A stretch of DNA of 64,000 nt from IMGVR_UViG_3300026078_000017:186001-250000; one strand, 5' to 3'. Shown: positions 19,639 through 56,261, counted from the first letter of the stretch. Program-made: numbers and translations. The notes: a model not told the origin generated them from the letters alone.

Positions 19639-20091
19639 CTAATGTTTTGCTGAAGCTTCTATTTGGTCGTAAAGTGCGTCTTCTGTTAGTTCCGTTGTTT
19701 CCTTCTTACGGGCAGCACCAACCAGTTCAACCAGCTTCAAAAGCTGGTCATTTGCCTTTGACATACGTTCAAGGTACCTTGACAAGTTTTGTCCATGAAT
19801 AGCATGTTCTGAAGGCTTACCTTGAACTTCCATGTAAAGGTCAGTCCAAATAATATAGGCATTCATACGATCCGTAATGGAGTTCTCGTAAATCTGTCTC
19901 CACAGGGATTTTTGTTTGTCTTCTGTGCTGGCAAGAGTTTCCAACAGCTCATTGAAAGACGCTAGTTGTTCGGTGGTCTTCTCTCTTAGAGAGTCAATGT
20001 TCTCACCAACAAAATTCCCCACAGGACTGTTAGTTTCAAGTTCTTCATCGTCTGTTATCAAAGCCTGTTGTTTTTTAGAATTGGAACTCAT
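19639..20091 (+). CDS. Hypothetical helical protein (150 aa)
   Basis: Only plus-strand ORF filling the gap; convergent with the sigma gene (17-nt overlap). Confidence 0.6.
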
Positions 20092-20917: not shown

Positions 20918-21233
20918 CGGACCTCACTGTTATATATCTCTCTTTACTAAGACGAGTAAAGTCGTTGATTAATGCCACAAGGGCTGTTCTACTGAGACGA
21001 ACACTGCTTAAGGCTTCCTCAACAGCGTATTTTACTTCTTTTGAATCAAAGAAAAGCTTCATTTCTAGAAGACTCTCTAGTGCTCCATATATTCCATTTA
21101 AAGTCTCAAGTGCATTTTCCAACTTGTCTTCAATTGAGAAGATAATTCTGGCAAACTTGATCAGATAGAAGGTTTCAACCCCTAAAAGACCTAACAAAAG
21201 AACAATAAGAGTAACTAGGAGAAATATCAACAT
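20850..21233 (-). CDS. Membrane-anchored coiled-coil protein
   Basis: N-terminal hydrophobic helix (LIFLLVTLIVLLLGLLGV) followed by a heptad-rich region. Confidence 0.55.
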   Translation of the reverse strand: MLIFLLVTLIVLLLGLLGVETFYLIKFARIIFSIEDKLENALETLNGIYGALESLLEMKLFFDSKEVKYAVEEALSSVRLSRTALVALINDFTRLSKERYITVRSDEEDEQELEGGRKDRLPPSIER

Positions 21234-21234
21234 T

Positions 21235-25855: not shown

Positions 25856-26538
25856 TTTCTTACCTTAAAGACTCCATAACTGACACAGTCATTGTAGACT
25901 GGGCTATAAAGTAATGATTTGTCTGCGTTTTGCTTCATTACAACTGCATCACATGGTTCAAACAAGTCAAAGGCATCAAGAGTAAAGTCTGTCATGCCAT
26001 ATGAGGTATTTTGATCCTCTGTCTTTAGGCCAGCTCGGTTTCTGGCTCTTTCAAGTTCATTCCATGGAAGACATGACTGGTCATAGTGATCCCAGTACTC
26101 ATCCAAGGTAATAACCATTTTTCCACCTGGACGAAGAACTCTGTGCATTTCCTTCAAAATCTTCTTGAAGAGGTCAAAGTTATCAATGTGTTCAAATGTA
26201 GAAATGGCGTAAACTAAGTCGATGGAGTTATCTGGCATCTGAAGGTTCGATGCATCCATCCACAAGACTTTATGGTTTGGAGTATTGATTTCTTCATTCT
26301 TGATTCGAGAGTCGAAGTCAAATCCAAGGTAGGATTTCGGCTTTAGGTTGTCTCTAACGAACTCATGCCAGTTGTGCTCTGAAGGTAAACCAGTTCCAAA
26401 GTCAATAACGTCCAATCCTTCTACAGGCTCTACAAAAGCAGCCCACATGTACTCATAAGGTCTGGAACCCCAGTTTCCAAAACGAATGCCAGGCAACTGT
26501 GGGTCTGAGGTTTTAAAGTATCCAAATTTTTTCATCAC
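25852..26538 (-). CDS. Class I SAM-dependent methyltransferase
   Basis: VIDFGTG motif I; DASNL..PDNSIDLVYAISTFEHI; RVLRPGGKMVIT. Confidence 0.85.
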   Translation of the reverse strand: MMKKFGYFKTSDPQLPGIRFGNWGSRPYEYMWAAFVEPVEGLDVIDFGTGLPSEHNWHEFVRDNLKPKSYLGFDFDSRIKNEEINTPNHKVLWMDASNLQMPDNSIDLVYAISTFEHIDNFDLFKKILKEMHRVLRPGGKMVITLDEYWDHYDQSCLPWNELERARNRAGLKTEDQNTSYGMTDFTLDAFDLFEPCDAVVMKQNADKSLLYSPVYNDCVSYGVFKVRK

Positions 26539-27473
26539 AACACCTTCAGGATATTATTGATTCGATTCACGAAAGTGTGTTTGTCCTTGACCTTTTGAAC
26601 CAATTCTCTTAGCGTTTGGGGATCTGGGTTTTCTTCCCACAGTTTTGCCTTAAGGTACATTTCTGCTGTGTCAGGAGAATATGGAAGCTTTTGGTCAAAC
26701 AAATCCCACACCGTCTGAGAGTTGGTTGCCGTCATACGACCAAAGGATAGGTTTTTAAAGACACGACAAGGCACATAGCCCTTGTCTACTTGCCAGGACC
26801 CCTGAAGGGCTGGGGCTATCCAGGACTCGGCTATAGCACGAGGCTGGAGGTCATTCTGGAGCTTGGCATGAATAAGTTGGACTCCATCACCCTTGGCTGC
26901 CTGAGCCAAGTCTTGAATTTTGTCATCATTCCTGTGAGGACCACCCATGATGCTACCAATCCAAAAGATTTGCTTGCGACGTTTGTGTTGCATGGCAATC
27001 GTGTGGTCTGGGTCTATTTCACTTGGAAGCAGATTTGTTGCCCATGGTTGGTAAAGAGTTCTGTTGTCACACCCGTGATCAGGTCTGGAATAATCCGGAT
27101 CTTTTTGATAATAGGCGAGCTGTTCAAGGTCAACAGGAACAACATTTCTTGTCAAACAGTCATGAGTGTAAACCTGAAGGTTCAAGACGTTCGGAAGAAT
27201 AGGGCGATACTTGTCCAGGTTGCAGTTATGAATGACGTACTTGCTTGACGCAACAATTGGAATGTTTTGATCAACCTGTCCTTCAGTGAGGAACAGGCAA
27301 TTCTCAAAAGAAAGACCAGAGACATCATCGGAGTTGTCCAGCCATAAAACCTCATATCCCATGTAGTTGAAGGTTCGATACCAGGAGTCATGAATAAAAG
27401 CAAAAGTGTTTGCCGTTCTAGCATCCAGGAGTTTATGACCCCAAACAACTACCTTGTTAAATTTTTCTGTCAT
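26535..27473 (-). CDS. Putative glycosyltransferase (CgeB-like GT-B)
   Basis: IFWIGS and YVPCRVFKNLSFG resemble CgeB-type RxFE motifs; cluster context. Confidence 0.5.
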   Translation of the reverse strand: MTEKFNKVVVWGHKLLDARTANTFAFIHDSWYRTFNYMGYEVLWLDNSDDVSGLSFENCLFLTEGQVDQNIPIVASSKYVIHNCNLDKYRPILPNVLNLQVYTHDCLTRNVVPVDLEQLAYYQKDPDYSRPDHGCDNRTLYQPWATNLLPSEIDPDHTIAMQHKRRKQIFWIGSIMGGPHRNDDKIQDLAQAAKGDGVQLIHAKLQNDLQPRAIAESWIAPALQGSWQVDKGYVPCRVFKNLSFGRMTATNSQTVWDLFDQKLPYSPDTAEMYLKAKLWEENPDPQTLRELVQKVKDKHTFVNRINNILKVL

Positions 27474-28479
27474 ACGTTTCCTTTTCTAAAAACTGATCAA
27501 GCCTTCTGGAAAGTTCTTCATAGGAGATGACAACATCTTTAGAGGAATAGTCCTTAAAAGGACCAGAAGCCTTCTGACGTGACCAGGACTCCCTGATGCA
27601 ATATGCAAAGCCATAGTCTTCCTTCTTTATGTCCTCAAGTTCGTTCATCATGATTTCATGAATCTTTTCTCCAGGACGAATACCAATGATTTTAGTAGGC
27701 TTGTTGAACTTCTTGCTAAAATATGTGGCAAGGTCTTCAACCTTGAATGAGTCGAGTTTTGGAACCCACATAGAACCTGAAGTGCCATAGGCAAGAGCCA
27801 TGTCAATAAGCTTAACCGACTCCTCCAGAAGCATCATGAACCTTGTCATGTTCGGATCTGTAATGGTAAAGGCTTCAGCCTCCTTGGCTTGCTTTAAAAA
27901 CAAGGGAACGATACTTCCTCTTGAGGAGATAACATTTCCATATCTTGTAACCATGTAGGCAACCGAACTTTTTGCAGCCGTAGCAATAACCAGTTTCTCA
28001 GAAATGCTCTTACACATGCCATATACGTTAATCGGATTGCATGCCTTGTCGGTTGACACAAAACAAACTCTGGTGATTTTATTGTCTGGACGTATGGAGT
28101 TTTCCTCAATGGCATCCAGTACGTTTCTAACGCCAATTACGTTTGTGTCGATTGACTCACTTGGTTGATTCTCGCAAGTATCTACCTGTTTCAAAGCCTG
28201 TGCAATAATGACATAAGTTGGGTTCTCTTGACGAATAACCTGACTTACACGACGTGGATCACGAACATCACAAATAATCGTGCTTATTTTCTTGCGGCTG
28301 TTTAACGGAGGAAACTTGTTCTTGAGTTCCCAGTGCTTTGCTTCATCCCTGGAAACCACAACAATGTCAGAAATATATTGCCTGTAAAAGGAAACAAGGG
28401 CTTGTCCCAAAGAACCAGCCCCTCCAAAAATCAACAACTTCTTGTCAGTTAAGTTACTTACGTGTTGCATTTGCCCCAT
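27457..28479 (-). CDS. UDP-GlcNAc 4,6-dehydratase (inverting; PseB/FnlA/CapE family)
   Basis: GGAGSLG, SRDEAK, ALKQV..CE, STDKACNPINVYG.CK, RYGNVISSRGSIVPLF, TRF, GIRPGEKIHE; no N-terminal TM domain. Confidence 0.88.
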   Translation of the reverse strand: MGQMQHVSNLTDKKLLIFGGAGSLGQALVSFYRQYISDIVVVSRDEAKHWELKNKFPPLNSRKKISTIICDVRDPRRVSQVIRQENPTYVIIAQALKQVDTCENQPSESIDTNVIGVRNVLDAIEENSIRPDNKITRVCFVSTDKACNPINVYGMCKSISEKLVIATAAKSSVAYMVTRYGNVISSRGSIVPLFLKQAKEAEAFTITDPNMTRFMMLLEESVKLIDMALAYGTSGSMWVPKLDSFKVEDLATYFSKKFNKPTKIIGIRPGEKIHEIMMNELEDIKKEDYGFAYCIRESWSRQKASGPFKDYSSKDVVISYEELSRRLDQFLEKETYDRKI

Positions 28480-29342
28480 CCGAAGTAAGTGTCTATCGGA
28501 ATCTGGAAGTTGTGTTCCTTGGCTTTTATGAATTGATCCATTTTAATTCCCCTGATTTCCTCGGGCATTATTGTCCTGGAAATGAAGTCTGCCACGAAGT
28601 CAGTCTTGGCTTGGTGATGTTGTTGACTCTGATGATCCCAGTTACTGGACCTACAATAGTGCAAGAAGGCATTTCCAAAGAACTCAAGGTTCCACTCAGG
28701 ATTGTATGAACCAACAATCTCATCAGGAAGACAATGCATGTTTTTGTTTTCTGGCTTGATATGCCAGGTGTTGTGCATGGTTCTTACTGCGGCTTTCACC
28801 TCAGGATGCTTCTCAAAATACAAGTGAAGTCCACCACCCGTGTCAAGACGAGTGTTGTTAATTCCAATACCTTCCCAGTCAATCGTCTCAGCCTCTGGCA
28901 ACAGCTCAGGATTTGCCATCACAATCACAGGTGTGAGATAGTGGTAAATGTGATCTCTCTGTTGTTTACACCCACCAAAGGTTCCTGTGTCTCCAAGAAA
29001 CTCATTGACGGAAAATGGAGCAACCATAAAGCAGTCGCCATCAAGGAACATCACATAGGAATCCTTGTGTTTACACATGTCAGAACGCCAAACCATGTTC
29101 AAGGAATCGGCATGATGTTTTCCTGCCAGGTGAAAGGGTGTATCTGAGTGAGTCTGGATTGTAAAAAGCCCAGCAGCTTCTGCTGTTGTATTAATAGCAT
29201 CTCTCAAACTCTGTTCTCTGGCATTATTGATGATGGTGAAGTCAAAAGGGTCTTTTAGGTGCTTTTGAAGGGTCATCAACTGCCATCTGATAAACTCAGG
29301 ACGATTGTAGTGAACAGCATATACATGTACAGGTTTAGTCAT
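28458..29342 (-). CDS. Putative GT-A fold glycosyltransferase
   Basis: VHYNRPEFI...TIINNA...MFLDGDCF (DxD) pattern. Confidence 0.55.
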   Translation of the reverse strand: MTKPVHVYAVHYNRPEFIRWQLMTLQKHLKDPFDFTIINNAREQSLRDAINTTAEAAGLFTIQTHSDTPFHLAGKHHADSLNMVWRSDMCKHKDSYVMFLDGDCFMVAPFSVNEFLGDTGTFGGCKQQRDHIYHYLTPVIVMANPELLPEAETIDWEGIGINNTRLDTGGGLHLYFEKHPEVKAAVRTMHNTWHIKPENKNMHCLPDEIVGSYNPEWNLEFFGNAFLHYCRSSNWDHQSQQHHQAKTDFVADFISRTIMPEEIRGIKMDQFIKAKEHNFQIPIDTYFGWGKCNT

Positions 29343-30189
29343 TTTCTTTCATCCACTCTCTCAGTTCACAAAGTTGATCACAAATGTTTGGTGCTTCTCC
29401 ATTGCTAGGCAACAGAGCACGATTGACTGCTTTTGGAGCTTTAACATTTTCAACCAAAGGATTTTTCCACTCATTACAAAACACGTTGCTAATGTTAACC
29501 AGAAGATCATATTTTGTTATTGGTGCACTTGCTAGTTGTACGAGCATTCCTGGTGGAAGAGTTAGCAATTGACTTTTGTTGAAAATAAATCTCTCAAGGT
29601 ATTGAGCCAAATATAAAGTTGTTACACCAGACCAAATATGGTTGTTAAATCCTGGAACGCTTTGTTTTGGACTGTTCCTAAACCACTCAAACAAACCATG
29701 TTCAGTGTCGGCCGGACCAATGATGCTTGTCCTTACCACGATAGTGTCTGATGGTTCTCCAAGAGCCTTAGAAATACCATAGTCATCATCTGCGTCCTTT
29801 GGTGCTGAGGCGATATATCGTTCACCTGGTTTGAGGTCGCCCTTAAACACACAGTCACTTGAAATGTGAATTAGTTTGACATTAGCCTTTTTACAAGCCA
29901 ATGCCAGCTTCCATGGAAATACAGCATTAACCTCATAAAAGTCTGAGGACTTCAATCCTTCTTTTTGCTTGATGTTTCCAATGCAGTTAATGACAAAGTC
30001 ATAACCTTCAAAACTTGGTAGCAAGTCCGACTTCACGTCAAACTTGATAACTCCCACAGCTTTTCTTGTAGGCATCCAAGAAGGAATTTTGTCTCGAACA
30101 GTAAAGGTAACATTGTGATCTTTAGAAATCAAATACCTAACAACCACACTGCCCAACATCCCTGTGCCGCCGAGTACCAATACTTTCAT
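29335..30189 (-). CDS. RmlD-like NDP-sugar 4-keto reductase (SDR)
   Basis: LGGTGMLG, VINCIG, HISSDCVF, YGISKALGE (YxxxK), RTSIIG, WSGVTT. Confidence 0.85.
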   Translation of the reverse strand: MKVLVLGGTGMLGSVVVRYLISKDHNVTFTVRDKIPSWMPTRKAVGVIKFDVKSDLLPSFEGYDFVINCIGNIKQKEGLKSSDFYEVNAVFPWKLALACKKANVKLIHISSDCVFKGDLKPGERYIASAPKDADDDYGISKALGEPSDTIVVRTSIIGPADTEHGLFEWFRNSPKQSVPGFNNHIWSGVTTLYLAQYLERFIFNKSQLLTLPPGMLVQLASAPITKYDLLVNISNVFCNEWKNPLVENVKAPKAVNRALLPSNGEAPNICDQLCELREWMKEND

Positions 30190-30875
30190 GTTCTCATTTC
30201 CTTGTGGTTTTTATCAAGAGCCAAGAGTCTCTTCTGAAATGGAAGAGACCAGGACTCAGGATAACAGTAAGAAGGCGACAAGGACAAAGTAGGAGGATTA
30301 TCGATAAAATACCTGTTCATGTGAGACTCATCATGCCAAACGGCTATGATATTTTTGGCTTTATCTTCCAAAACACGACTACCAATGGTTTCACACATCT
30401 TCAGGTATTCTTTAGCAGAACCTCCATTGAATCCACCAGCATAATACACAGTGCCCTCTGAAGGCGCTACAAAGGCTTTGGAGACACGATTGGTCTCATA
30501 GGTGAATGCCTCCCTTGGCTTGTTGAAAAAGCCCGGGTGGATGGTTCCTACGCGGTCTGAGAGCACTTCATCCCCAACCGTGTCCACAAACAACATGTCG
30601 GCATCACAATAAAAGAGATAATCCATCTCTTCTAGTTGCTTCTTTGTCGAAGGCATGGTGAACACATTATACCGAAATAAGGTTGGTCCCGGCCAAGCCA
30701 TATGGATTTGTGGGATAATAACCTGACCAGGTTCTGGTGTGATGCCATGTTTGTTTGTGAAGACAAACATAGTAACCTCATGTTTGGTCAAAAAATGCTT
30801 TTTAACCGACTCCCATAAAGGTGGTACAAAGTCATAGTATTTATTTGTGGCAATAACCAACAGTCCAATTTTCAC
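30186..30875 (-). CDS. GT6 family glycosyltransferase (ABO-like alpha-1,3-GalNAc/Gal transferase)
   Basis: IATNKY, WP..TL.RY, YLFYCDAD, HPGF, YYAGGFNGG, WHDESHMNRYF: the full GT6 motif set. Confidence 0.9.
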   Translation of the reverse strand: MKIGLLVIATNKYYDFVPPLWESVKKHFLTKHEVTMFVFTNKHGITPEPGQVIIPQIHMAWPGPTLFRYNVFTMPSTKKQLEEMDYLFYCDADMLFVDTVGDEVLSDRVGTIHPGFFNKPREAFTYETNRVSKAFVAPSEGTVYYAGGFNGGSAKEYLKMCETIGSRVLEDKAKNIIAVWHDESHMNRYFIDNPPTLSLSPSYCYPESWSLPFQKRLLALDKNHKEMRT

Positions 30876-30879
30876 AGGA

Positions 30880-31482
30880 TTACTCCTTGAGCTTCATGAA
30901 CAAGACAACTTCCTTTGGGTTCACACGAACCCAAGTAAATGAAGTGACCTTTGGGTTCTGGCTCAAGAAGTTCTCAATATCTTGCTTGTTGTAGCGGTTA
31001 TGGAAAAGTTGATCTGGCTCAAAGAAGTCAATCTTCTCTGGTTCATCTGTTGGCTCAATGAAGAAAATGTTGATGGCTTCTTTTTGTCCAATACGAATCA
31101 TCTCTCCAAGACACTCACGAAACGTAGGAAGATGTTCAAGAACGTGGCGAGAGAAAGCAACCTCAAAGGATGAGTCTGGAAGTGAAATCTCCTCAACTGG
31201 AGAATGAAGCGCAGGAACTCCTTGAGAGGTAATGTGGCTATACAAAACCCAGGAAGAGTCAACTCCCATGTAGGAGATCTCATATCCATCATTCTTGTAG
31301 CCAAAATACTCAGTGGCTGGTCCGCATCCAAGATCTACAAGAGACTTATAGCCTGCATTTTTGACATAGTTTCTTACGAAAACCTTGGACTCTGCGTTGA
31401 AGTCACCAATCCAGCTCTTAAACTCACCGAATTTCTGACCAACGTTCTTGTCCCACCATGTTTGATTAAATCTCTCAGTCAT
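30880..31482 (-). CDS. Class I SAM-dependent methyltransferase
   Basis: LVDLGCGP, MGVDSS, LPDSSFEVAFSRHVLEHL. Start moved to ATG 31482. Confidence 0.85.
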   Translation of the reverse strand: MTERFNQTWWDKNVGQKFGEFKSWIGDFNAESKVFVRNYVKNAGYKSLVDLGCGPATEYFGYKNDGYEISYMGVDSSWVLYSHITSQGVPALHSPVEEISLPDSSFEVAFSRHVLEHLPTFRECLGEMIRIGQKEAINIFFIEPTDEPEKIDFFEPDQLFHNRYNKQDIENFLSQNPKVTSFTWVRVNPKEVVLFMKLKE

Positions 31483-31882
31483 TGTCCCACATTTCCTTCT
31501 CGTAAGAATACTTCTTGGCAATCCACTCTTTGTAAAAATGATGTCCTATGTCTAGAGACACATAGTTGTCTCCTTGCATGCCTTGCTCAGAGTAGTCTAC
31601 ATCGTTACAAGCTTTCTTAGAAAATCCTTTTTTGGCTAGGAACTTATGAAACTCCTGTAGCCACAAGCCATCCGTGTAAATCAGTCCATGTTTATCTGGA
31701 TTCCAGGAACTCTTGTAAAAGTAAACCTTGAGTTCTCCCCAGGGCTTCTGTACAGGTCCATCCCAGGATTCGAAAATAAATCTGGCTCTGGCATCACGCA
31801 TCTTGACTTTTCTGTACTCATTTGACCACAACCCATTGCCGGCTGTTTGAATAAGCTTGTTTATTGCCAGATGTTTTTTCAT
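31475..31882 (-). CDS. Hypothetical phage protein (135 aa)
   Basis: GELKVYF...W...GLIYTD...YSEQGMQGDNYVS pattern that I recall from large-phage hypotheticals; not a sugar enzyme. Confidence 0.6.
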   Translation of the reverse strand: MKKHLAINKLIQTAGNGLWSNEYRKVKMRDARARFIFESWDGPVQKPWGELKVYFYKSSWNPDKHGLIYTDGLWLQEFHKFLAKKGFSKKACNDVDYSEQGMQGDNYVSLDIGHHFYKEWIAKKYSYEKEMWDND

Positions 31883-31883
31883 G

Positions 31884-32606
31884 TTACTTACCTGCTGTTT
31901 GTTGGAGGGCTGCCTTCATTGAGATACAGCAAAGTTGAGGAATCCGTGGGTCATACTTCGGATTATGAGAAACGTTATATTCAACCAGCATCTCATCCAG
32001 GTTTGCAAAATTAAACCAAGAAACACACTTAAGCCATAAGTGATAGTCTTCTGCTACTGGATAGGTGTTGTCGTATCCACCAGTTCTCAAGACAACTTCC
32101 GGGCGAAACACCACAGAAGGGTGGGCAAGGGCATTGTGACCAAGGAGTAGCGTTTTCTTTATTTCTGCATTTTCCTTGGGATAAGTCATCTGACTATTCA
32201 AAACGACTTTGGTCCCTGTGGAATAGTCGACTCTTAGGATTTGAGTACCACAAATATGAACGTCAGGATTTTCTGTCATGAACTTGACTTGTTTTTGGAG
32301 TTTGGTTGGTTCCCAAACGTCATCAGCATCAAGTCGAGCAATCAAGTCTGAACTTGCTTCCCCAAGAATCGTAAAGAGTCCTTTGTTCAAGGCAGGAACG
32401 ATTCCAGGTTCCTTGCAAGAAAGCAAGGTCCAATCTTGACCAGCCTCATCCATAAGGTCACTAACGATTTTTACGGTATTGTCCGTGCAGTTGTTGTCAA
32501 CCAACACAAGACGATAGACTCTATAAGTCTGAACTAATAAAGATCTAATTGCTCTTTCAATGGTTTTCTCACCATTGAACACAGGAAGCAAAACCGCTAC
32601 TTTCAT
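31884..32606 (-). CDS. GT2 glycosyltransferase
   Basis: LLPVFNGEKTIERAIRSL, VDNNCTD, IARLDADD, HPSVVFR, EDYHLW. Confidence 0.9.
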   Translation of the reverse strand: MKVAVLLPVFNGEKTIERAIRSLLVQTYRVYRLVLVDNNCTDNTVKIVSDLMDEAGQDWTLLSCKEPGIVPALNKGLFTILGEASSDLIARLDADDVWEPTKLQKQVKFMTENPDVHICGTQILRVDYSTGTKVVLNSQMTYPKENAEIKKTLLLGHNALAHPSVVFRPEVVLRTGGYDNTYPVAEDYHLWLKCVSWFNFANLDEMLVEYNVSHNPKYDPRIPQLCCISMKAALQQTAGK

Positions 32607-32609
32607 AAA

Positions 32610-33416
32610 TCACCTCTTTACAAAAGTCAAAGGTACTAGTTGATGAGCCGACTTGTTCTTGATTCTTTGGAATGTTTTAATGTCAATCTTCTTGCCTTCA
32701 TTCCACAAGCTAAGCAAGTCTCCTTCAGAACCTCCACCAAACACGTTCTTTACTTCAGACTGCACACGGTTATGGGGAACGTTGAAAACTCTCGATACCG
32801 TGAAACAAGCCATCTGTGGATGAGGAATCTGATTGTGAAGGTGAGACATGTTTCCTTCAAAGGTATTTGGGGATTTCCAGTCACCACTGTTGTTCATGGC
32901 AAACAAGGCGTCTGTCCTACGAAACACGTGCCCATCTACGGACAAAGGGTAATTCCAGTCCCAGTCTGTACCCTTCCAGTTCCACACAAAGAATGGTTCT
33001 TTGGTTACGCCTGCATGTGGAACACTCTGTCTTGATTGTGTGGAATAACAAAAATCTAGGTGCTTGCCAAGTCTGAGACTAAAGCAAAACACTGGAAGGT
33101 TGCCTCCAAGAAATCTTGTTATCAGGTCAAAATCCACATTATCCTTAAACACGTCATCGTCTGTGAAGTACACGACATGTTCCTTGGCTCCATTCACAAG
33201 ACCCATGGTTTGTGTGCGAAAGTCAAACTCAGGATGAAAGTTCACTTTTGGGAAAGCCTGTTTCGCCTGTTCCATAGGCCAAATATACTCGTGGTCAGCC
33301 TTGTAAAGGACATTCACATCTGTAGGATCCATGTTCGAGTTATAAAACATGGACTCCAACAGAGCAAACAACTGCATTGGTCTGTTTTTAGAAAACACAA
33401 TTGCGGTAATGTTCAT
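32610..33416 (-). CDS. Putative GT-A fold glycosyltransferase
   Basis: FSKNRPMQL, YFTDDD, YPLSVDGHVFR; cluster context. Confidence 0.55.
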   Translation of the reverse strand: MNITAIVFSKNRPMQLFALLESMFYNSNMDPTDVNVLYKADHEYIWPMEQAKQAFPKVNFHPEFDFRTQTMGLVNGAKEHVVYFTDDDVFKDNVDFDLITRFLGGNLPVFCFSLRLGKHLDFCYSTQSRQSVPHAGVTKEPFFVWNWKGTDWDWNYPLSVDGHVFRRTDALFAMNNSGDWKSPNTFEGNMSHLHNQIPHPQMACFTVSRVFNVPHNRVQSEVKNVFGGGSEGDLLSLWNEGKKIDIKTFQRIKNKSAHQLVPLTFVKR

Positions 33417-34414
33417 AGTGGATGTTTCTCGCACCAGTCTTTCATGATTTCAGGTGCGTTTCTCAAAATCTTGACAGAAGGAGTTGTGGAACCATCCCAA
33501 GGACTGTGGAAAATCCATCCGCCAGTCTTGTCGCGAAGTTCCTTTGCCTTGGCTTCAATCATCTCATCCGTAACCTGTTCCCAGGGAACATCAAAGAAGA
33601 CATTCGAGGAACGATTGATGTCATTATACATTGACTTCCAGAAATCCCCAAAGAAGTGCTTATACTTCTCAATCTTGCCCTTGATGCTGTACCAGGAATA
33701 GTGATACACCGTTGGCAAACCAAAACTCATTTGATTATACCATTTTTCATAGGCTTCAAGAGCCTTAGGATCTTTTAGGGCTGCCATTCTCAAGGACTCA
33801 AGTTGACTATTCATGAAGTTCAAACTTGGAACCGGAAGTCCTTGTTCTTTATTGATATAGTCACAGGTGTCCGTTCCTGGCTTTGCATAAACTAGTCCGT
33901 TGACAACCTGACGATGTGTAACCGGCATACCATGAGTAATGCCTGGGTGATTGCGACTTACACGCCACTTCCATGGGTTGATGTCCACACGAACTTTGTC
34001 TGGACCGCCCCAAAACTCCACAACTGGCAAGCACAACAGAGGAACATCCTCAAGGTTTTTTGCTTGAACAATCAAGTTATCCAAAATAGGTCTGTCAGAG
34101 GCATGAACGACTTCATCACAGTCCATCTGCCAAAGATAGTCGCCTGTACACTTCTCACGAGCTGCTTGCTTGAGCACACCATCATACACTCCGTGGTTTG
34201 GAGCATTCCAGTCCATGTCGGCATAATAAACAAAGAGCTTACCTTTGTTGGCTGCCATCATGTCTGCGAGAACTTTTCTCGTGTCATCGGTTCCGTCCGA
34301 GGAGTCCATTACAACGACTTCATCACAGAAGTCGATAAGAGACTGAATGGACTCCCTAAAAGGGTAATCCATGGCAATGCAGTTACGAGTGGTTGTATAT
34401 CCAGATAGTTTCAT
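33413..34414 (-). CDS. GT2-like glycosyltransferase
   Basis: YPFRESIQSL..FCDEVVVMD...DDT, KQAAREKC, WQMDCDEV (DxD). Confidence 0.75.
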   Translation of the reverse strand: MKLSGYTTTRNCIAMDYPFRESIQSLIDFCDEVVVMDSSDGTDDTRKVLADMMAANKGKLFVYYADMDWNAPNHGVYDGVLKQAAREKCTGDYLWQMDCDEVVHASDRPILDNLIVQAKNLEDVPLLCLPVVEFWGGPDKVRVDINPWKWRVSRNHPGITHGMPVTHRQVVNGLVYAKPGTDTCDYINKEQGLPVPSLNFMNSQLESLRMAALKDPKALEAYEKWYNQMSFGLPTVYHYSWYSIKGKIEKYKHFFGDFWKSMYNDINRSSNVFFDVPWEQVTDEMIEAKAKELRDKTGGWIFHSPWDGSTTPSVKILRNAPEIMKDWCEKHPL

Positions 34415-34422
34415 TTGATTCC

Positions 34423-35286
34423 TTACTTGCAATGTTCAGTCATGTAATATGGACAATACTTGCATGAGTTTCTATTTTTGGTGAAAATCTTCTTTTCGAC
34501 AGACCCAACCATTCTGTAGATGTTCTCCATTGCCTTTTCGATTGCCTTCTCACCAACCGACACAGGCACGAACTCGATGTGCTCACCTGGCTTTGCTGTT
34601 CTCTTGAGAAGAACCCAGGCACATCTAACCTTTTCGATTGGAACATTATTCTTGGCACACCAGAAGTGCTTGTAAAGCACAAGCTGCATCTGTTTCATTT
34701 GGTCACGCTTCTTGTCCCCAGTCCAACCCCAGTCGGTTGTCTTCCAGTCAATAATCCAATATTGCTGTTCAATCTCTGGTTCCTTCTTACGCTTGTCGAC
34801 CTTCTCACACTCAAGGACACAGTCAATAAAGCCCTTGAAGTAGCGGTTCTTCTTTTTTTCTAGACTTTCGAACAAGTCGTACTCAGCAGCAATGATCTTG
34901 TAGTTCTGAAAGTTCTCCTGAAGAAATCCTGGAAGTTCCTCAAAAATAGGCTTGACTGTGGCAGCCCACACAGCAGGGTCATCCTTGAACTCAGGGATTG
35001 CCTTGAGAACCTCAATGACCTTCTCGCCTGTGACAACAGGGTCTAGTGGAGCCTTGCCAAGCAAATACTGCTCAATGGCATCATGGAGCGTTCCACCAAA
35101 CTCTGTGTGTTGGGTTGGCTTGTCCTCCCCAAGTTTATCGATGTGCTTCAACTTGTGACGAAAGGAACACTCGAACCAATCTGTGAACTCGGAATAGGAC
35201 ACATGCCACTTCAACGTTGGAAGTGGGTTGCCCTCAAAGATCATTGGTAACTTGATTTTTTCTTGTTCTTCTGTTATTTCAGACAT
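34423..35286 (-). CDS. PD-(D/E)XK exonuclease (RecB/Cas4-like, probable Fe-S)
   Basis: SYSEF...C, G..LH..IE, E..L, GFID, IIDWKT, Q...Y, C-terminal CKYCPY...C. Confidence 0.85.
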   Translation of the reverse strand: MSEITEEQEKIKLPMIFEGNPLPTLKWHVSYSEFTDWFECSFRHKLKHIDKLGEDKPTQHTEFGGTLHDAIEQYLLGKAPLDPVVTGEKVIEVLKAIPEFKDDPAVWAATVKPIFEELPGFLQENFQNYKIIAAEYDLFESLEKKKNRYFKGFIDCVLECEKVDKRKKEPEIEQQYWIIDWKTTDWGWTGDKKRDQMKQMQLVLYKHFWCAKNNVPIEKVRCAWVLLKRTAKPGEHIEFVPVSVGEKAIEKAMENIYRMVGSVEKKIFTKNRNSCKYCPYYMTEHCK

Positions 35287-35334: not shown

Positions 35335-35586
35335 TTATTCTTCAATTCCTGCTTCAATTTTTTCTTTCTTTGTCATTGGTGCCAAACAATATTTTGTTGA
35401 TCGCTTTATTGTTCTACCCAATGGGGTTTCAATAGATGTTTCATCAATGAAACATTCATTAACATCTATAGAATCTTTTTCTTCACCTTCTCCTAAGAGA
35501 CTTTTCACGAAATTCATCGCAAGTTTCTTAGTAGAAAAATAATGTGTATTAGAAGTCGAATAAATATAGACAGAATAAATCTTCAT
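35335..35586 (-). CDS. Hypothetical AT-rich protein (83 aa)
   Basis: ORF overlapping the IMPDH stop (ATGA); markedly AT-rich. Confidence 0.5.
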   Translation of the reverse strand: MKIYSVYIYSTSNTHYFSTKKLAMNFVKSLLGEGEEKDSIDVNECFIDETSIETPLGRTIKRSTKYCLAPMTKKEKIEAGIEE

Positions 35587-36632
35587 TTTCTAACTCCAAA
35601 TGACACGTTCTTACGGAACTCTTCAAGGTTTCTTGCGTTAGAGTAACTCATAGAACTCTGAAGTCCACCCTTAATGTGTTTAACCACATCTCCAACCGTC
35701 TCACCCGAGATATCCAACACTGTGGAAATACCTTCTGGTGTAGGTAGCACTGCGGCGTCCTTGATGGTCAACATGGCATCTTTGGAAGCCATACCACGAT
35801 AGACCTTCATTCCATTGATACGCGGTCCTGGAGCCTCCTGGCAGCTCGCAAAAAGCCTTCCGGACATAACCAGGTCAGCACCCAAGCCAAGAGCCTTGGC
35901 AATGTCGCCAATTTCCTGGATACCACCATCAGCAACAAGTAGGGGCTTTTCCAACATGTGATTATGGGCTTGTTTATACTTGTCCAGGTAAATTCTTTGG
36001 TTAATATCACGAGCACAATCCATTACGGCCGAAAACTGAGGGACAGTTACGCCTGTGATATTCTTGGTTGTACACACAGCACCTGGACCAATGCCAATTT
36101 TAACAGCATCTGCACCCCAGGAAATCAAGTCAAGACAACCTTCCGGAGTTGCCACGTTTCCTGCCATGATGAACGTGTACACGCCAAACTTTTGACGCAT
36201 GAACTTAATCATGTCCTTCATCATCAAGGAGTGACCATGAGCAATGTCAATAATGAAGTTTCTGGCTCCTGCCTTGAAAAGAGCTTCTGCTCTTTCTTTT
36301 GAGTCAGAGTTTACTCCGACAGAAACAAAACATTGTCCATCTTCATTCTGAACACGTTCAAACTGTGCTACATTTTCCTCGATTGACATAAAACGATGAA
36401 CAGCACCAATACCACCAGCTCTCCAAATAGCTAGAGCCATGTTCCCATCAGTAACTGTATCCATGTTTGCTGACATGACCGGAACGTCCAGTTTAAAATC
36501 CGGAGAACCCAACAAGCCCTCTTTCAACACAAGACTTGTGTCTACTTGCGTCCTGGACGTAATGTCGCTGTACTGTGGATAAATGAACACGTTCTTGTAG
36601 TCCAGGTTTTCTACCTCTTTATGTATTTTCAC
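35583..36632 (-). CDS. IMP dehydrogenase / GMP reductase family protein (no CBS domains)
   Basis: [39 protein letters not shown] (catalytic Cys), ADGGI, YRGMAS, PEGIS. Confidence 0.92.
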
Positions 36633-37071
36633 TATTAAGTTCCTTTACAACATCCGAATATTCAATCAAGTCATCTGCAAAATAGAAGTCTGTCTCGTCT
36701 TTAGACTTGTCGCACAGGTAACCAATGCTACCTTTTTCCGACAGCACGTAAAACTCAGAGGTTACAACAACAGTTTCTGTGGTGGGGTTACCCTTGTCGT
36801 CATAATACCCATCAGCATGGATAATACGACCCACATCAACATGAACAATGGACCCGATTGGGTACTTCTTTTGAAGCAAGTCCCAAATCTGGAACAACAT
36901 GTTGAGTTCCTTCTGGCTAGTAACTGGACGACGTCTTCCATAAAGAGTTTGAAGTCCAAACAAGATACCCGAAGGCAAAGTCATTGGTTGAACCGAAACA
37001 ATCTGTTGAGATATTAGTTGTGGCAAAACTGTCCTGACAGTGGGAAATCTAACTTTTTTTGGTGGTGCCAT
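36619..37071 (-). CDS. Small protein with N-terminal major-capsid (gp23 Gol-region)-like peptide and unrelated C-terminal beta domain
   Basis: ATG 37071 overlaps the upstream stop (TGATG). FPTVRTVLPQLISQQIVSVQPMTLPSGILFGLQTLYG matches the gp23-family VRR..P.LI...I..VQPM..P.G..F motif. Confidence 0.75.
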   Translation of the reverse strand: MAPPKKVRFPTVRTVLPQLISQQIVSVQPMTLPSGILFGLQTLYGRRRPVTSQKELNMLFQIWDLLQKKYPIGSIVHVDVGRIIHADGYYDDKGNPTTETVVVTSEFYVLSEKGSIGYLCDKSKDETDFYFADDLIEYSDVVKELNSENT

Positions 37072-37976
37072 CAGAGAACTATTTGATCCCAAAATGCTTT
37101 GCCACGACCACGAAGATATTGTACCGTGTCTTCAACAGTTCCAGCAAACCAAGGCTCATCCTTGTGCTGAACATTTTCATTGAGGTCAAGAGCACAACCA
37201 ATAATCTTCGCCTCAATAACAACTCTTGGACAGGTGTCAAAATCCAAAGGATGGAAAACTAGTCCATCGCACTTTGCAAGTTCTTGAAGGAAATCGTTGG
37301 CAGCCAAGTTAGAAAGGATCTTGACAGGCATTCTCTTTTCCGTACACCACTTTATGGTTTCCTGTGTACCCTTAATCCAGTTGCTGGACCCCTGAACAGC
37401 CCAAATCTTAATTGGAAGCTTACCAGCCACTTGCTCATGAACTTGACGAAGTTCCAAAAGCTTGTCAATTGTCTCATCTGAGAAAACTGAACTCAAAACA
37501 ACATGCTTGCTTTCTTCCACGAAGAGAAGAGCAGGCATTCTTGACAGGAAATGTTCCTTCTGTTTTTCTGACATCCAGAAAATATGCTGGGCTGCTGAGT
37601 ACAACTTCTCCACGACCATCCCATGAGGACGAAGAGGACAGTCACAAGGACTATTTGTCTGCTTCACGTGTGCCACCTCAGACCTAAACATGCAGTACTT
37701 GTAGTCATATTCGATTACTGAGTACTTGATGTTGTTCTGAATCATGTAGGCAAGACTTGCTACGTCACACTGTGTATAGTTGCCAAGGATCCAATATACG
37801 TCCTTGTATTTCTCCAACATGTCAATCGTGAGACTTGAGGAATGAACCTTGAAAATCTTATGAGGGGACTTCTGGATTATCGCCTCTGAGGTAGCCTCGG
37901 CTCCTCCTGCATAATCCTCTAAAAACATGTCACCGACAAAAACAACACGGGTCCCTGATGGAACTACAAATTCCAT
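37071..37976 (-). CDS. Putative GT-B fold glycosyltransferase (alternative start 38054)
   Basis: YAGGAE N-terminal motif; LVFHPLDFDTCPRVVIEAKIIGC (DxxPxxxxEA) motif. Confidence 0.6.
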   Translation of the reverse strand: MEFVVPSGTRVVFVGDMFLEDYAGGAEATSEAIIQKSPHKIFKVHSSSLTIDMLEKYKDVYWILGNYTQCDVASLAYMIQNNIKYSVIEYDYKYCMFRSEVAHVKQTNSPCDCPLRPHGMVVEKLYSAAQHIFWMSEKQKEHFLSRMPALLFVEESKHVVLSSVFSDETIDKLLELRQVHEQVAGKLPIKIWAVQGSSNWIKGTQETIKWCTEKRMPVKILSNLAANDFLQELAKCDGLVFHPLDFDTCPRVVIEAKIIGCALDLNENVQHKDEPWFAGTVEDTVQYLRGRGKAFWDQIVL

Positions 37977-43952: not shown

Positions 43953-45311
43953 TCAAAGAATCTTAGCAGCCAAGGTTGCCAACTCAGAACGTTCACCCTT
44001 TGTAAGTGTGACGTGACCTGAGATCTGTTCTTTTTTGAACTTCTCAATAGCCACCGTCAAACCGTTAGAAAGACTGTCCACGTAGGTGTTGTCGATCTGC
44101 TCAATGTCACCTGTGAGAACGATCTTGGTGTTTTCGCCAACTCTCGTAAGAATCGTCTTCAACTCATGGGCATTGAGGTTCTGAGCTTCATCGATAATCA
44201 TGAAAGCATTGGAGATACTTCTGCCACGAATGAAGGTCATTGCCTCAACTTCAATCGTACCTTCCTCGAAGTACATGTTCAAGGTCTCTTCAATGTTTCT
44301 GGATTTTTTACCAGAAGCACTCAACAAGAAACGCAAGTTGTCCTTGATAGGAGCAACCCATGGTTCCATTTTCTCTTCAATGGTACCTGGAAGGAAACCA
44401 ATGTCTTTACCCATTGGCTGAACTGGACGACAAACCACAAGACTCTTGTACTTCTTCTTTTCAAGAACAAGCTCCAAGCCTGCTGCGATTGACAACAAGG
44501 TTTTACCACAACCAGCCAAGCCTGCAAGAGTTACGAGTTTGACATCTGGGTCAAGAAGCAACTGAAGGGCGAATCTCTGTTCTTTGTTCTTTGCTTCCAA
44601 CTTACCAAGTTTCATTACATCATCTACCAAGTAGAGAGGTTCATCCTTGGAAACGAAACGTACAAGTCCAATAGACTCTTCATCAGACTCCGTGTCTTCT
44701 AAAACAAGGAACTGATTTGGAAGCAAGCCCCACTCATCTACCTTACCTGGGTGGATTTCAAGACACTTATCAGCGTAAAGTTTGTCAATGTCAAAATCTC
44801 CCTTAAGAGTCTTGACACCCGAGTACAAACTAGAAACTGATGTGGTTGCTTGAGCCTTTTTATAGTCTTCACACTCAAGACCAAGAATATCTGCCTTGAG
44901 TCTAAGGAGTGTGTCTCTTGTTACCAAAACAAGTTTTTCCTCTGTCTTAGCAGCGACGATTGTCTGACACAAGGTAAGGATGGAGTTGTCTCCAGACTGT
45001 TTGCCTGCAAGTTCGACTGGGAGAGCTTGTGGAGCTGCATTCACAATGTCATCAACAGACAAGATTCTAAGGGTGCCACCATTATTGAGAGCAATGCCGG
45101 TTTTAAGTGCCTTGTCATTTTTGGTAATATCTGCCAACTTACGAACAGTCTCACGGGCATTTCTACCAACTTCGTCTTGACGGTCCTTGTGACGATCGAG
45201 TTCCTCAATAACAATCAAAGGCAAAATGACGTAATTGTCTTCAAATGAAAAAAGTGCTTCTGGATCGGAAAGTAGAACGTTCGTGTCAATAACAAAAGTT
45301 TTCTTGGCCAT
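43953..45311 (-). CDS. phoH: PIN-PhoH (PhoH2/YlaK-type) ATPase
   Basis: N-terminal PIN (VIDTNVLL, EELD, D..IL, VTRD..LR.KA); Walker A GLAGCGKT; RGRS; IIDEAQN; LTRVGENTKIVLTGDIEQID; ERSELA. Confidence 0.93.
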   Translation of the reverse strand: MAKKTFVIDTNVLLSDPEALFSFEDNYVILPLIVIEELDRHKDRQDEVGRNARETVRKLADITKNDKALKTGIALNNGGTLRILSVDDIVNAAPQALPVELAGKQSGDNSILTLCQTIVAAKTEEKLVLVTRDTLLRLKADILGLECEDYKKAQATTSVSSLYSGVKTLKGDFDIDKLYADKCLEIHPGKVDEWGLLPNQFLVLEDTESDEESIGLVRFVSKDEPLYLVDDVMKLGKLEAKNKEQRFALQLLLDPDVKLVTLAGLAGCGKTLLSIAAGLELVLEKKKYKSLVVCRPVQPMGKDIGFLPGTIEEKMEPWVAPIKDNLRFLLSASGKKSRNIEETLNMYFEEGTIEVEAMTFIRGRSISNAFMIIDEAQNLNAHELKTILTRVGENTKIVLTGDIEQIDNTYVDSLSNGLTVAIEKFKKEQISGHVTLTKGERSELATLAAKIL

Positions 45312-46208: not shown

Positions 46209-47612
46209 ATGACATCAACAACAACCTTCGTTGACAGAGAAGACTATCAGAAACAAATTCGCCTGTTATCTGAGGAGATTTTAACCAAATACAATGGAAT
46301 TTCTTCACTTTTAACAGAGGACTTGACCGCACTAGATTCTAATACTCTCCATCTTATTGGTAAAGTTTTACGCTCGAATTCACCTCTGGGGGTGAGTTTT
46401 TGTAAGCTCCTTGGTAACTCTTTGTTACAGGCTGAGTCACTAGCTGGCAACTCTGCCAACATTGGACTCATCTATTGCCTGAGCCTCCTTAAGAACGTTT
46501 TGGCATCAGATACCCTAAAAGGCATGTCAGATGTTGCACTTCTGTCTCAATATGAGACAATTCTCCTCAAGCTAAAAGAAGCCATCGAAAACAGCTATCA
46601 AGTTCCTAACTTGGAAGACCTGGAGCAGATTATCGAAAAGGTGTGTGAGGATCGTCTGTTGGCACAGGTTGTCGTTGGAGCAATGAAGGTTGCCGGACTT
46701 CAAGGAAAGATCTACTTTGAAAACGGCAGACAGCACAACTTTGTCGTAGAACGTAGAACTGGGTACAACTTCAAAACAAAACCCTACAAGTTCTTCTTGG
46801 ACTCAAGTGGAGTCTGGGAAAGACAGAATGTAAGGGTTCTGTTGATTGATGGTGTTCTTGAGCAGGTATCTGAGATTGATCAGATTTTGAATGCCGCTCT
46901 TACAAACAAACAGTCAGGTATGATTGTGTGCAGAGGTTTCTCTGAAGAAGTTATTGCCACTCTCAAGGCCAACTTTGACAGAGGACTAATCGACGTCATG
47001 CCCGTCAGAATCAACTCTGACCTGGAGTCCATTAATATTCTCAATGACATGGCAAGTGTGTGCGGCTGTGATATTGTTTCTTCCCTTAAGGGCGATTTGA
47101 TTTCTTGTGTAAAGTGGGATAGTCTTCCTGTTATCAACAAGGTTAGATGTCTTCTTGACAAGACAACCATTGAGGAAGAGAAAACCAGAAATAGTGTCAA
47201 TGCCCAAATCAAACACTTGTTGGCTAAAAGATTTGACAACCAAAACTTGGAAGACGTTGTGAACCTGATTGACGAGAGAATCAAGGCTCTAACCTCTGAG
47301 TCTGTTATTGTTAGACTTCCAGTTATGACCCATCTTCAAAACCAAACAGCAAAAGGGAAGTTCGATACTTCCCTTCGTACAGTCAAGGCAGTTTTGAATA
47401 ATGGCCTAATGACCTTTGGTGACCTGAGAAACAATTTTAAACCAAATAATACTCCACTCGACAGAGCAGTACTTCAAAGCCTAGAAGAAACCCTAAAACA
47501 TTTTGAGAATGTCAAGGTTTCTTCCTTGTCAGCTTACTTGGCCTTCAATGTTTGTGGTAAACAAACGTTGATGATTGCCTCAACTAACGGTGCTATTGTT
47601 GAGGAGGACTGA
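46209..47612 (+). CDS. GroEL/Cpn60-like chaperonin with degenerate ATP-binding motifs
   Basis: G..F apical entry, LLIDG.L..VSEI..IL, IVCRGFSEEVIATL.AN..RG, LNDMA..CG, ERI..L, C-terminal LMIASTNGAIVE; GDGTTT replaced by GNSANI. Confidence 0.75.
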   Translation: MTSTTTFVDREDYQKQIRLLSEEILTKYNGISSLLTEDLTALDSNTLHLIGKVLRSNSPLGVSFCKLLGNSLLQAESLAGNSANIGLIYCLSLLKNVLASDTLKGMSDVALLSQYETILLKLKEAIENSYQVPNLEDLEQIIEKVCEDRLLAQVVVGAMKVAGLQGKIYFENGRQHNFVVERRTGYNFKTKPYKFFLDSSGVWERQNVRVLLIDGVLEQVSEIDQILNAALTNKQSGMIVCRGFSEEVIATLKANFDRGLIDVMPVRINSDLESINILNDMASVCGCDIVSSLKGDLISCVKWDSLPVINKVRCLLDKTTIEEEKTRNSVNAQIKHLLAKRFDNQNLEDVVNLIDERIKALTSESVIVRLPVMTHLQNQTAKGKFDTSLRTVKAVLNNGLMTFGDLRNNFKPNNTPLDRAVLQSLEETLKHFENVKVSSLSAYLAFNVCGKQTLMIASTNGAIVEED

Positions 47613-56236: not shown

Positions 56237-56256
56237 CATGTGATGTATGCTAGGGT
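56228..56256 (+). promoter_or_regulatory. Sigma70-type early promoter
   Basis: TTGACA-N17-TAGGGT with TGC just before -10; ATG at 56262. Confidence 0.7.
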
Positions 56257-56261
56257 GTATC

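What the first reader, a model, noticed from the sequence alone, without database searches (positions are those of the whole stretch)
36619..37071. Stand-alone major-capsid Gol-region peptide fused to a small beta domain: capsid mimic or decoy
Seen: the N-terminus (36940-37047) reads TVRTVLPQLISQQIVSVQPMTLPSGILFGLQTLYG. Known (T4 gp23 sequence quoted from memory): MVRRAIPNLIAFDICGVQPMNSPTGQVFALRAVYG aligns without gaps at 16/35 identities and largely overlaps the Gol peptide, which binds EF-Tu and triggers the Lit protease. The rest of the 150-aa protein is not capsid-like; its YPIGSIV...VVVT...GYL pattern resembles the array family at 56-64 kb. The gene is intact, coupled at both ends and far from any head gene. 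Inference: a dedicated capsid-epitope module acting as a decoy for capsid-sensing defences, an EF-Tu binder, or an assembly/chaperonin regulator.
Basis: partly seen in the sequence, partly recalled or inferred. Interest (0 to 1): 0.82.

Follow-up and report, generated by a model that had tools for sequence, protein, structure and literature searches.

The report
Stand-alone capsid-strand mimic protein
A jumbo phage carries a small, conserved gene whose product starts with a copy of the most conserved strand of the T4-type capsid protein joined to a new small domain. It belongs to a class of such capsid-strand mini-proteins that I could not find described, and their role (most likely shielding or mimicking the unfolded capsid protein) is unknown.

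Summary
Window 36619-37071 (-) encodes a 150-aa protein. Residues about 6-48 match Pfam Gp23 above its curated cut-off (32.5 vs 24.4 bits, E 8e-8). The rest is a confidently modelled helix + small beta-barrel + helix domain with no detectable relatives. Its claimed likeness to the 56-64 kb array is not supported.

The gene is real. Orthologues sit in the same operon in related jumbo phages, and dN/dS is 0.12-0.26 in both halves.

New here:
- One orthologous subclade carries a different conserved capsid segment in place of the Gol-like one (Gp23 profile 135-168).
- The slot holding the gene is hypervariable in relatives.
- Many other T4-like phages encode stand-alone mini-proteins of 55-190 aa. 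Each has one of three conserved capsid strands plus an unrelated tail. One 10-kb contig carries all three.

It is therefore one member of a class of capsid-strand mimics that I found no description of. Function is untested. My leading reading (about 0.35) is shielding of, or competition for, the exposed Gol strand of nascent capsid protein. This phage's own capsid gene could not be recovered.

The parts
36619..37071 (-). Whole gene: 150-aa two-part protein. Capsid-strand tail plus a new small domain.
   Evidence: ORF. Orthologues at 41-67% identity. dN/dS 0.12-0.26. The source annotation called only the last 93 aa (P0002). The conserved N-terminal part argues for the ATG at 37071.
36925..37053 (-). 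Residues about 7-49: copy of gp23 'motif 1', which is the end of the N-arm plus the first P-domain strand up to I-domain linker 1. It corresponds to the T4 Gol region, gp23 residues 97-136.
   Evidence: Pfam Gp23 above the gathering score. Full MCP profile positions 69-119 of 579, E 4e-16. Alignment to T4 gp23. AF2 pLDDT 53-67, so probably flexible on its own.
36622..36924 (-). Residues 50-150: family-specific domain. Helix 53-69, small beta-barrel about 75-131, C-terminal helix 138-149.
   Evidence: AF2 with 17 sequences gives pLDDT about 82-91 over most of it. No significant Foldseek match in PDB or BFVD. No Pfam, PHROG or NCBIfam hit. Only weak SH3/Tudor-like leads.
37071..37976 (-). Upstream operon partner, 301 aa, GT-B-like glycosyltransferase family found only in phages. 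Its stop overlaps the small gene's ATG.
   Evidence: Start chosen from the length of homologues. ESM Atlas score 0.99 to phage clusters, some carrying Glycos_transf_1. No Pfam or PHROG hit. Conserved next to PrimPol in relatives.
35583..36632 (-). Downstream operon partner, an enzyme of the IMP dehydrogenase / GMP reductase family. Its start overlaps the small gene's end by 14 nt.
   Evidence: Pfam IMPDH 3e-83. NCBIfam GMP reductase and IMPDH models match below their cut-offs. Conserved neighbour in all relatives.

Best explanation
Shown. This is a real, selected, accessory phage gene. Its product has two parts. The first is a flexible N-terminal tail that copies one conserved core strand of the T4-type major capsid protein. 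In the folded protein this stretch is ordered P-domain (residues from about 106 in T4), and in T4 it is the Gol region. The second part is a new domain of about 100 aa. The protein belongs to a wider class of stand-alone capsid-strand proteins in T4-like phages. These use any of three conserved capsid segments: motif 1, motif 2 and the C-terminal YAPYVP segment.

Inferred mechanism. The tail acts by mimicry of the unfolded capsid protein. It either occupies the factors that read the exposed Gol strand of nascent capsid protein (EF-Tu, and Lit- or CapRel-type motif sensors), or, in the motif-2 and motif-3 versions, pairs with and masks that strand by beta-strand complementation. The net effect would be that nascent capsid protein is not read by the host before it folds, which is a counter-defence or folding-shield role. 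The C-terminal domain would then be the part that makes binding non-activating, or that anchors or oligomerises the protein. No step of this mechanism has been tested.
For: Capsid origin of the tail.

Both halves are under purifying selection while synonymous sites are saturated, so conservation is at the protein level and is neither recent copying nor a DNA element.

Orthologues in the same operon carry gp23 profile 135-168 instead of 3-52, joined to the same domain. What is selected is therefore 'a conserved capsid strand', not one peptide.

A second, unrelated mini-protein group shows the same swap: motif-1 P0072/P0073 and the motif-2 ORF L208:5743-5925 share a basic tail. One 10-kb contig has separate mini-ORFs for motifs 1, 2 and 3.

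The position is an accessory one. The slot between the GT-like and IMPDH-like genes is empty or holds unrelated tiny ORFs in relatives that keep the same gene order. The neighbours are replication, nucleotide and sugar genes, not head genes. Another member overlaps a peptide deformylase gene beside clamp-loader genes.

The tail is not predicted to pack on its own domain.

Literature: a 29-residue Gol region of gp23 binds EF-Tu domains II/III and suffices to license Lit, and it is the most conserved part of gp23 (PMC3014915). Lit and CapRel read short capsid motifs (bioRxiv 10.64898/2026.01.04.697583). gp23 residues 66-105 and 132-160 are disordered in the unexpanded head, and the segment between them is ordered P-domain (PMC9546572).
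Against: No binding, expression or phenotype data exist.

In the one studied system (Lit), a free Gol peptide activates the defence rather than blocking it. A motif-1 copy would therefore have to be a non-activating antagonist, and that is assumed, not shown.

EF-Tu is too abundant to be titrated by an ordinary early protein.

That motifs 1, 2 and 3 form one beta-sheet is inferred from HK97-fold topology and was not checked on coordinates here.

Finding only conserved segments as stand-alone copies is partly a detection bias of profile searches.

The phage's own capsid gene was not recovered, so similarity of mimic to self is unknown. The one thing known is that the own contig has no second QQI-x-SVQPM site.

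Host and defence repertoire are unknown.
Confidence: 0.35

Rival explanations
1. Capsid-directed assembly factor. The tail pairs with its partner strands in the phage's own unfolded capsid protein. It would then act as a holdase or folding helper, possibly with the phage GroEL-like chaperonin, or as a timer of assembly, with no role in defence.
For: Three different strands are used interchangeably or together, and by HK97 topology all three are inferred to belong to the P-domain sheet. A divergent phage GroEL-like gene lies 9 kb away. It is established knowledge that T4 gp23 folding needs GroEL plus a phage co-factor encoded away from the head genes. The I-domain inserted between motifs 1 and 2 is very long in these capsid proteins, so strand 1 waits unpaired during translation.
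Against: The gene is absent from close relatives that keep the same operon, which is odd for an assembly helper. It is not linked to head genes. A trans copy of strand 1 would compete with the cis strand rather than help it. No Cpn10/gp31-like fold was found.
Confidence: 0.25
2. Inter-phage weapon. A dominant-negative capsid fragment made early to poison the capsid assembly of co-infecting T4-like phages, as a form of superinfection exclusion.
For: The mimicked segments are those shared by nearly all gp23-type capsids, and tblastn finds only MCPs, in 2146 phage records. The gene is accessory, patchy and in a variable slot. One phage carries a cocktail of three fragments.
Against: The producer's own capsid protein should be equally sensitive, and no self-immunity is evident. 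The own MCP was not recovered for comparison.
Confidence: 0.1
3. Minor virion protein. The capsid-like arm docks the small domain onto the shell, as a decoration, cement or special-vertex filler.
For: Literature shows that N-terminal arms and I-domain linkers make inter-subunit beta contacts in T4 heads (PMC9546572). From general knowledge, not checked here, decoration proteins of other phages dock by an N-terminal strand. The variable C-terminal modules would fit a 'tag plus cargo' design.
Against: Most of motif 1 is ordered P-domain in the folded protein rather than a flexible surface arm (PMC9546572). Many class members are a peptide only, with no cargo. The gene is not in a structural module and is patchy in distribution.
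Confidence: 0.1
4. Dedicated EF-Tu effector. The Gol-like tail recruits the C-terminal domain to EF-Tu to modulate translation.
For: The Gol region binds EF-Tu and inhibits its GTPase (PMC3014915). Leaders are basic. One class member is coupled to peptide deformylase.
Against: Orthologues with motif 2 in place of the Gol-like motif keep the same domain and locus. Motif 2 and motif 3 have no known EF-Tu link.
Confidence: 0.08
5. Not functional as read. Either it is debris of a duplicated capsid gene, or only the 93-aa C-terminal product that the source annotation called is made.
For: The source gene call (P0002) starts at Met58.
Against: The N-terminal part is conserved with dN/dS 0.13-0.24 while synonymous sites are saturated. 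Full-length calls exist in at least 8 independent contigs. The start and stop overlaps are conserved.
Confidence: 0.03

Closest known systems
Gol region of T4 gp23 (trigger of the e14 Lit protease through EF-Tu)
   Same: It is the same segment of the capsid protein: family profile positions 9-50 align to gp23 97-136, with 16/35 identities for this protein. The Gol peptide works as a free peptide, so a stand-alone copy is biochemically plausible.
   Different: Gol is part of the capsid protein and is a liability to the phage. Here the segment is a separate gene fused to another domain, and orthologues replace it with a different capsid segment. Lit activation and EF-Tu binding were not tested.
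Pfam PF07068 Gp23 / HK97-fold major capsid proteins
   Same: Significant profile match above the gathering score.
   Different: The match covers only 43 of 376 profile positions. There is no spine helix, A-domain or remaining P-domain. hhalign against an MCP alignment aligns confidently only the first 45 or so residues. It is not a capsid protein.
Phage anti-defence proteins that work by mimicry or sequestration (for example the DNA mimic Ocr, or sponge proteins for immune signals)
   Same: Small accessory genes in variable slots. The proposed logic is the same: present a copy of what the host recognises.
   Different: I found no described case that copies a piece of the phage's own capsid protein (literature searches). 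The function here is inferred only.
T4 gp31 / CocO co-chaperonins and phage-encoded GroEL
   Same: These are accessory factors devoted to folding gp23-type capsid proteins and are encoded away from head genes. This phage also has a GroEL-like gene.
   Different: No sequence or fold similarity to Cpn10/gp31.
Capsid-derived assembly modifiers of satellites (for example the PICI Ccm, a capsid protein homologue)
   Same: Capsid-derived sequence used in trans.
   Different: Those are full HK97-fold homologues encoded by satellites. This is a strand of about 45 aa on a phage's own genome.

Membership tests
Major capsid protein Gp23 (PF07068, HK97 fold) | Significant match to the family profile | tested here: met
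   32.5 bits against a gathering score of 24.4, E 8e-8.
Major capsid protein Gp23 (PF07068, HK97 fold) | Full fold: P-domain with spine helix, A-domain, length about 450-650 aa | tested here: not met
   Only profile positions 6-48 of 376 are matched. The protein has 150 aa. hhalign and the full MCP HMM cover only motif 1. The AF2 model of the remainder is a small barrel, not HK97-like.
Gol peptide (functional definition) | Corresponds to gp23 residues of about 93-122 and beyond | tested here: met
   Alignment to T4 gp23 97-136.
Gol peptide (functional definition) | Binds EF-Tu domains II/III and licenses Lit cleavage | not testable with these tools
   Needs biochemistry or multimer modelling. 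The host is unknown.
New family defined here (two-domain capsid-strand proteins of the PrimPol/GT/IMPDH operon) | C-terminal domain with the YP-x-GS ... SE ... VGFLC ... DFY-x-x-DDL-x-EY pattern | tested here: met
   Alignments A3 and A5. The profile finds 10 proteins with E<=1e-10 among 1.84 billion representatives.
New family defined here (two-domain capsid-strand proteins of the PrimPol/GT/IMPDH operon) | Position between the GT-B-like gene and the IMPDH-like gene, with overlapping start and stop | tested here: met
Co-chaperonin Cpn10 / gp31 | GroES-like fold or profile match | tested here: not met
   No Pfam, PHROG or NCBIfam hit. No Foldseek hit.
56-64 kb array family of this window | Profile similarity to the array paralogues | tested here: not met
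   hmmsearch finds nothing below E = 0.1 in the window, with the best array-region ORFs at E 0.5-6. hhalign probability is 0.08%.
Known anti-phage defence or anti-defence families | Match to a curated model | not tested

The most novel reading that the evidence does not exclude
T4-like phages widely deploy a previously unrecognised class of 'capsid-strand mimics'. These are small proteins made of a trans-acting copy of one of the capsid protein's conserved P-domain strands, alone or fused to varied modules. They would blind host sensors that read short capsid motifs, or otherwise control the unfolded capsid protein. The strand would be exchangeable by recombination with the capsid gene as the arms race demands.
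Probability: 0.3. Interest if true: 0.9.

Novelty: categorically new. Interest (0 to 1): 0.8.

Why it matters
Capsid proteins are now known to be major triggers of bacterial immunity. Lit and CapRel read short motifs, and Avs7, Avs8 and Avs10 read the fold. Their conserved core cannot mutate freely.

A phage-encoded, exchangeable copy of exactly those immutable strands would be a new way out of that bind. If instead the role is in folding, it would be a new kind of capsid-specific chaperone working by strand complementation.

[quoted passage not shown] It also flags many unannotated mini-genes of 55-190 aa in T4-like phage genomes. Gene callers truncate or name them as capsid fragments.

Tried and rejected
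1. Recovering this phage's own capsid gene failed. The window is positions 186001-250000 of IMGVR_UViG_3300026078_000017. The 5.8-billion-protein search listed 120 of 8000 scored candidates, none on a 320-kb contig. A peptide-level DNA pattern for QQI-x-SVQPM found only the small gene itself on the contig. Synteny with Flavobacterium phage immuto, where the MCP lies next to PhoH, is broken here.

2. Fold searches with the good AF2 model against PDB and BFVD gave nothing below E 0.03. ESM Atlas gave only weak SH3/Tudor-like leads. The first AF2 run, with 3 sequences, was useless at pLDDT 42.

3. The idea that the C-domain is a shrunken spine helix plus P-domain (a mini-capsid protein) was tested with hhalign against an MCP alignment. 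Only the N motif aligned with confidence, so I rejected it.

4. The link to the 56-64 kb array was rejected.

5. Repeat-rich giant proteins P0039 and P0082, which matched the barrel region several times, look like compositional matches.

6. The T4 late-promoter motif is absent from the whole window, and the sigma-70 and terminator scans were at background. Expression timing could not be read from the sequence.

7. No cultured phage has a full-length family member. Literature searches found no description of stand-alone capsid peptides. The original Lit/Gol papers are not in the held library.

Full report
**The gene and the match**

Window 36619-37071 (-) is an intact ORF of 150 aa. Its ATG shares one base with the TGA of the upstream gene. 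Its last 14 nt overlap the GTG start of the downstream gene. Residues 6-48 match Pfam Gp23 (PF07068) with E 8e-8 and 32.5 bits, above the curated 24.4, on profile positions 6-48 of 376. PHROG 138 'major head protein' scores 2.5e-7.

A profile of the family searched against PDB chains aligns positions 9-50 to residues 97-136 of real T4 gp23 (6uzc_a). The 35-mer sits at 36937-41, a few bases from the coordinates given. A full-length MCP profile hits this ORF and nothing else in the 64-kb window. The real capsid gene is therefore elsewhere on the contig.

**Where it comes from**

The window is positions 186001-250000 of a 320,479-bp IMG/VR contig, which is a jumbo phage. By its baseplate J protein the nearest cultured relatives are distant, at about 31% identity. 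They are the Flavobacterium immuto phages, Microcystis phage Mel-JY01 and an uncultured 484-kb phage.

The gene lies in one long minus-strand block:
- PIN-PhoH, PrimPol and a 301-aa phage-only GT-B-like protein;
- this gene;
- an IMP dehydrogenase / GMP reductase family enzyme and a PD-(D/E)XK nuclease;
- a sugar-nucleotide and glycosyltransferase island of about 14 kb, followed by baseplate genes.

**It is a family, and it is under selection**

The 5.8-billion-protein and 1.84-billion-representative searches find few relatives. Ten have E<=1e-10, are 104-172 aa long and are 28-67% identical. Every relative whose context could be fetched sits in the same place, between the GT-like gene and the IMPDH-like gene, with the same overlapping start and stop.

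Nei-Gojobori estimates give dN/dS 0.12-0.26 for the capsid-like part and for the rest alike, with synonymous sites saturated in most pairs. The capsid-like stretch is thus kept by selection on the protein. It is neither a recent copy nor a DNA-level element. The 93-aa product called in the source annotation (P0002) is a truncation.

**Anatomy**

With a 17-sequence alignment AlphaFold2 models residues 50-150 confidently, with block pLDDT about 82-91. The elements are a 17-residue helix, a small beta-barrel and a C-terminal helix. The first 49 residues stay at pLDDT 53-67 and do not pack on the domain. Foldseek finds nothing significant in PDB or BFVD, and no profile library names the domain. 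There are only weak SH3/Tudor-like leads.

**The orthologous swap**

Four family members (P0010, P0012, P0014, P0020) lack the Gol-like motif. Three of them match Pfam Gp23 at profile positions 135-168 instead; P0012 is above the cut-off, P0014 and P0020 are below it, and P0010 has no hit. This is the other highly conserved capsid segment, the RKLKA-W-x-x-E-x-x-x-DL stretch. In T4 it is gp23 about 255-284, just before the spine helix.

Two of the four, P0012 and P0020, sit in exactly the same operon position. Their phages are the more distant branch by IMPDH identity, at 63-65% against 73-79%. Both tail types join the common domain at the same point, just after a Y/H-G dipeptide that follows each motif in capsid proteins.

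According to the T4 head structures, gp23 66-105 and 132-160 are flexible and the stretch between them is ordered P-domain. The two I-domain linkers stand in for the HK97 E-loop (PMC9546572). Motif 1 therefore runs into linker 1, and motif 2 follows linker 2. By HK97 topology they would be partner strands at the base of that loop. I did not check this on coordinates.

**A wider class**

Many hits of the family profile are not capsid fragments. They are complete small proteins that start with a short, often basic, non-capsid leader, carry motif 1, and then end or continue into unrelated sequence. About 25 are representatives of 50%-identity clusters, for example P0016, P0017, P0023, P0035, P0037, P0038, P0045, P0061, P0074, P0080 and P0089. 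All ten that I scanned match Gp23 above its cut-off, and almost only on the first 45 or so profile positions (P0074 and P0015 reach a little further). I confirmed five on DNA as internal ORFs bounded by stops.

P0074 overlaps the stop of a peptide deformylase gene, beside Tet/JBP and clamp-loader genes, in a 167-kb T4-like contig.

It hits three places only: motif 1, motif 2 and the C-terminal YAPYVP segment.

One 10-kb contig (L100) carries three separate mini-ORFs, one per motif. They are interleaved with baseplate genes and are not collinear with a capsid gene, and at least two have similar amphipathic leaders. A motif-2 mini-ORF (L208:5743-5925) has the same basic tail as the motif-1 minis P0072 and P0073. 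That is a second, independent case of strand exchange on a common chassis.

No cultured phage has a full-length member of the window's family. I found no description of such proteins in the literature.

**Accessory status**

Among 81 IMG/VR loci with the IMPDH-like gene, only this contig and one relative carry the family. Many others keep the order PrimPol, GT-like, IMPDH-like, PD-(D/E)XK. In them the slot is empty, holds 46-47-aa acidic ORFs, or holds an unrelated 114-aa ORF. The gene therefore occupies a hypervariable slot and is dispensable for close relatives.

**Interpretation**

What is shown:
- a selected, operon-embedded, accessory protein with an exchangeable capsid-strand tail and a new domain;
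- membership of a broad class that uses three conserved capsid segments.

What is inferred is that the tail works by mimicking a strand that is free only in unfolded capsid protein.

The literature fixes one partner for motif 1. The Gol region binds EF-Tu and thereby licenses the Lit protease (PMC3014915). Short capsid motifs are also what CapRel reads (bioRxiv 10.64898/2026.01.04.697583).

My leading reading (0.35) is that these proteins keep the nascent Gol strand from being read. Motif-1 copies would do this by competition, and motif-2 and motif-3 copies by pairing with the strand. This fits the accessory slot, the patchy distribution, the non-head neighbourhood and the strand exchange. Its weak point is that a free Gol peptide activates Lit, so the copy must be a non-activating binder.

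The rivals are:
- a capsid-directed folding or assembly role (0.25), attractive because one phage carries all three strands and this phage has its own GroEL-like gene;
- an inter-phage capsid poison (0.10);
- a docked virion protein (0.10);
- a dedicated EF-Tu effector (0.08), weakened by the swap;
- debris or mis-annotation (0.03), contradicted.

**Limits**

The phage's own capsid gene could not be reached with the tools and quotas available. Multimer modelling was not available. Host, expression timing and any phenotype are unknown. Finding only conserved segments as stand-alone copies is partly a detection bias of profile searches.

Noticed in passing
window 46209-47612 (+): Divergent phage-encoded GroEL-like chaperonin. 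PHROG 5725 scores 3.9e-19 and NCBIfam GroEL models reach 8e-18, far below their cut-offs. There is no Pfam hit at 1e-3. It lies on the opposite strand, 9 kb from the finding, and is conserved in the L090 relative.
   Followed up: partly
window about 20000-34500 (-): Large sugar-nucleotide and glycosyltransferase island: two GT1-like genes, a GDP-mannose dehydratase/epimerase fusion, methyltransferases, a Polysacc_synt_2 dehydratase, a GT6 family enzyme and GT2 enzymes. It is conserved in relatives and suggests virion, DNA or host-surface glycosylation.
   Followed up: partly
window 56247-63978 (mostly +): Array of about 20 tandem paralogous small genes (70-120 aa) that share a P-x-VGD ... LVL ... 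W pattern. It is unrelated to the finding's domain by profile comparison.
   Followed up: partly
L100 2260-2508, 4622-4927, 5059-5316 (all -): One 10-kb T4-like contig carries three separate mini-ORFs. Each bears a different conserved capsid segment (motif 1, the C-terminal YAPYVP segment, motif 2), and at least two have similar amphipathic leaders. They are interleaved with two T4_baseplate genes and lie near a GIY-YIG endonuclease and Thy1.
   Followed up: partly
L188, L189, L191, L193 about 2300-2490; L202 2129-2470: In relatives the slot between the GT-like and IMPDH-like genes holds 46-47-aa ORFs with very acidic tails, or a 114-aa Cys-rich ORF, or nothing. It is a hypervariable accessory slot.
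   Followed up: partly
L091 10572-11755: A relative of this phage carries a gene with a RuBisCO large-subunit Pfam hit a few kb from the locus.
   Followed up: no
window 47593-49272 (-): 559-aa protein with a helical N-terminal half and a long Q/P/A/T-rich low-complexity C-terminal half. It has no family hit.
   Followed up: no
window 43953-45311 (-): PIN-PhoH fusion protein, conserved in the L090 relative.
   Followed up: no
L095 8001-8498: P0074 (165 aa), with capsid motif 1 at its very N-terminus and a helical tail, overlaps the stop of a peptide deformylase gene. It lies next to Tet/JBP, sliding clamp, clamp loader and RegA genes in a 167-kb T4-like contig, and was seen in 5 contigs.
   Followed up: partly
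window 36619-36900 (P0002): The public gene call for this locus starts at Met58 and drops the capsid-like tail. Automatic annotation will systematically hide this class or label its members as capsid fragments.
   Followed up: yes
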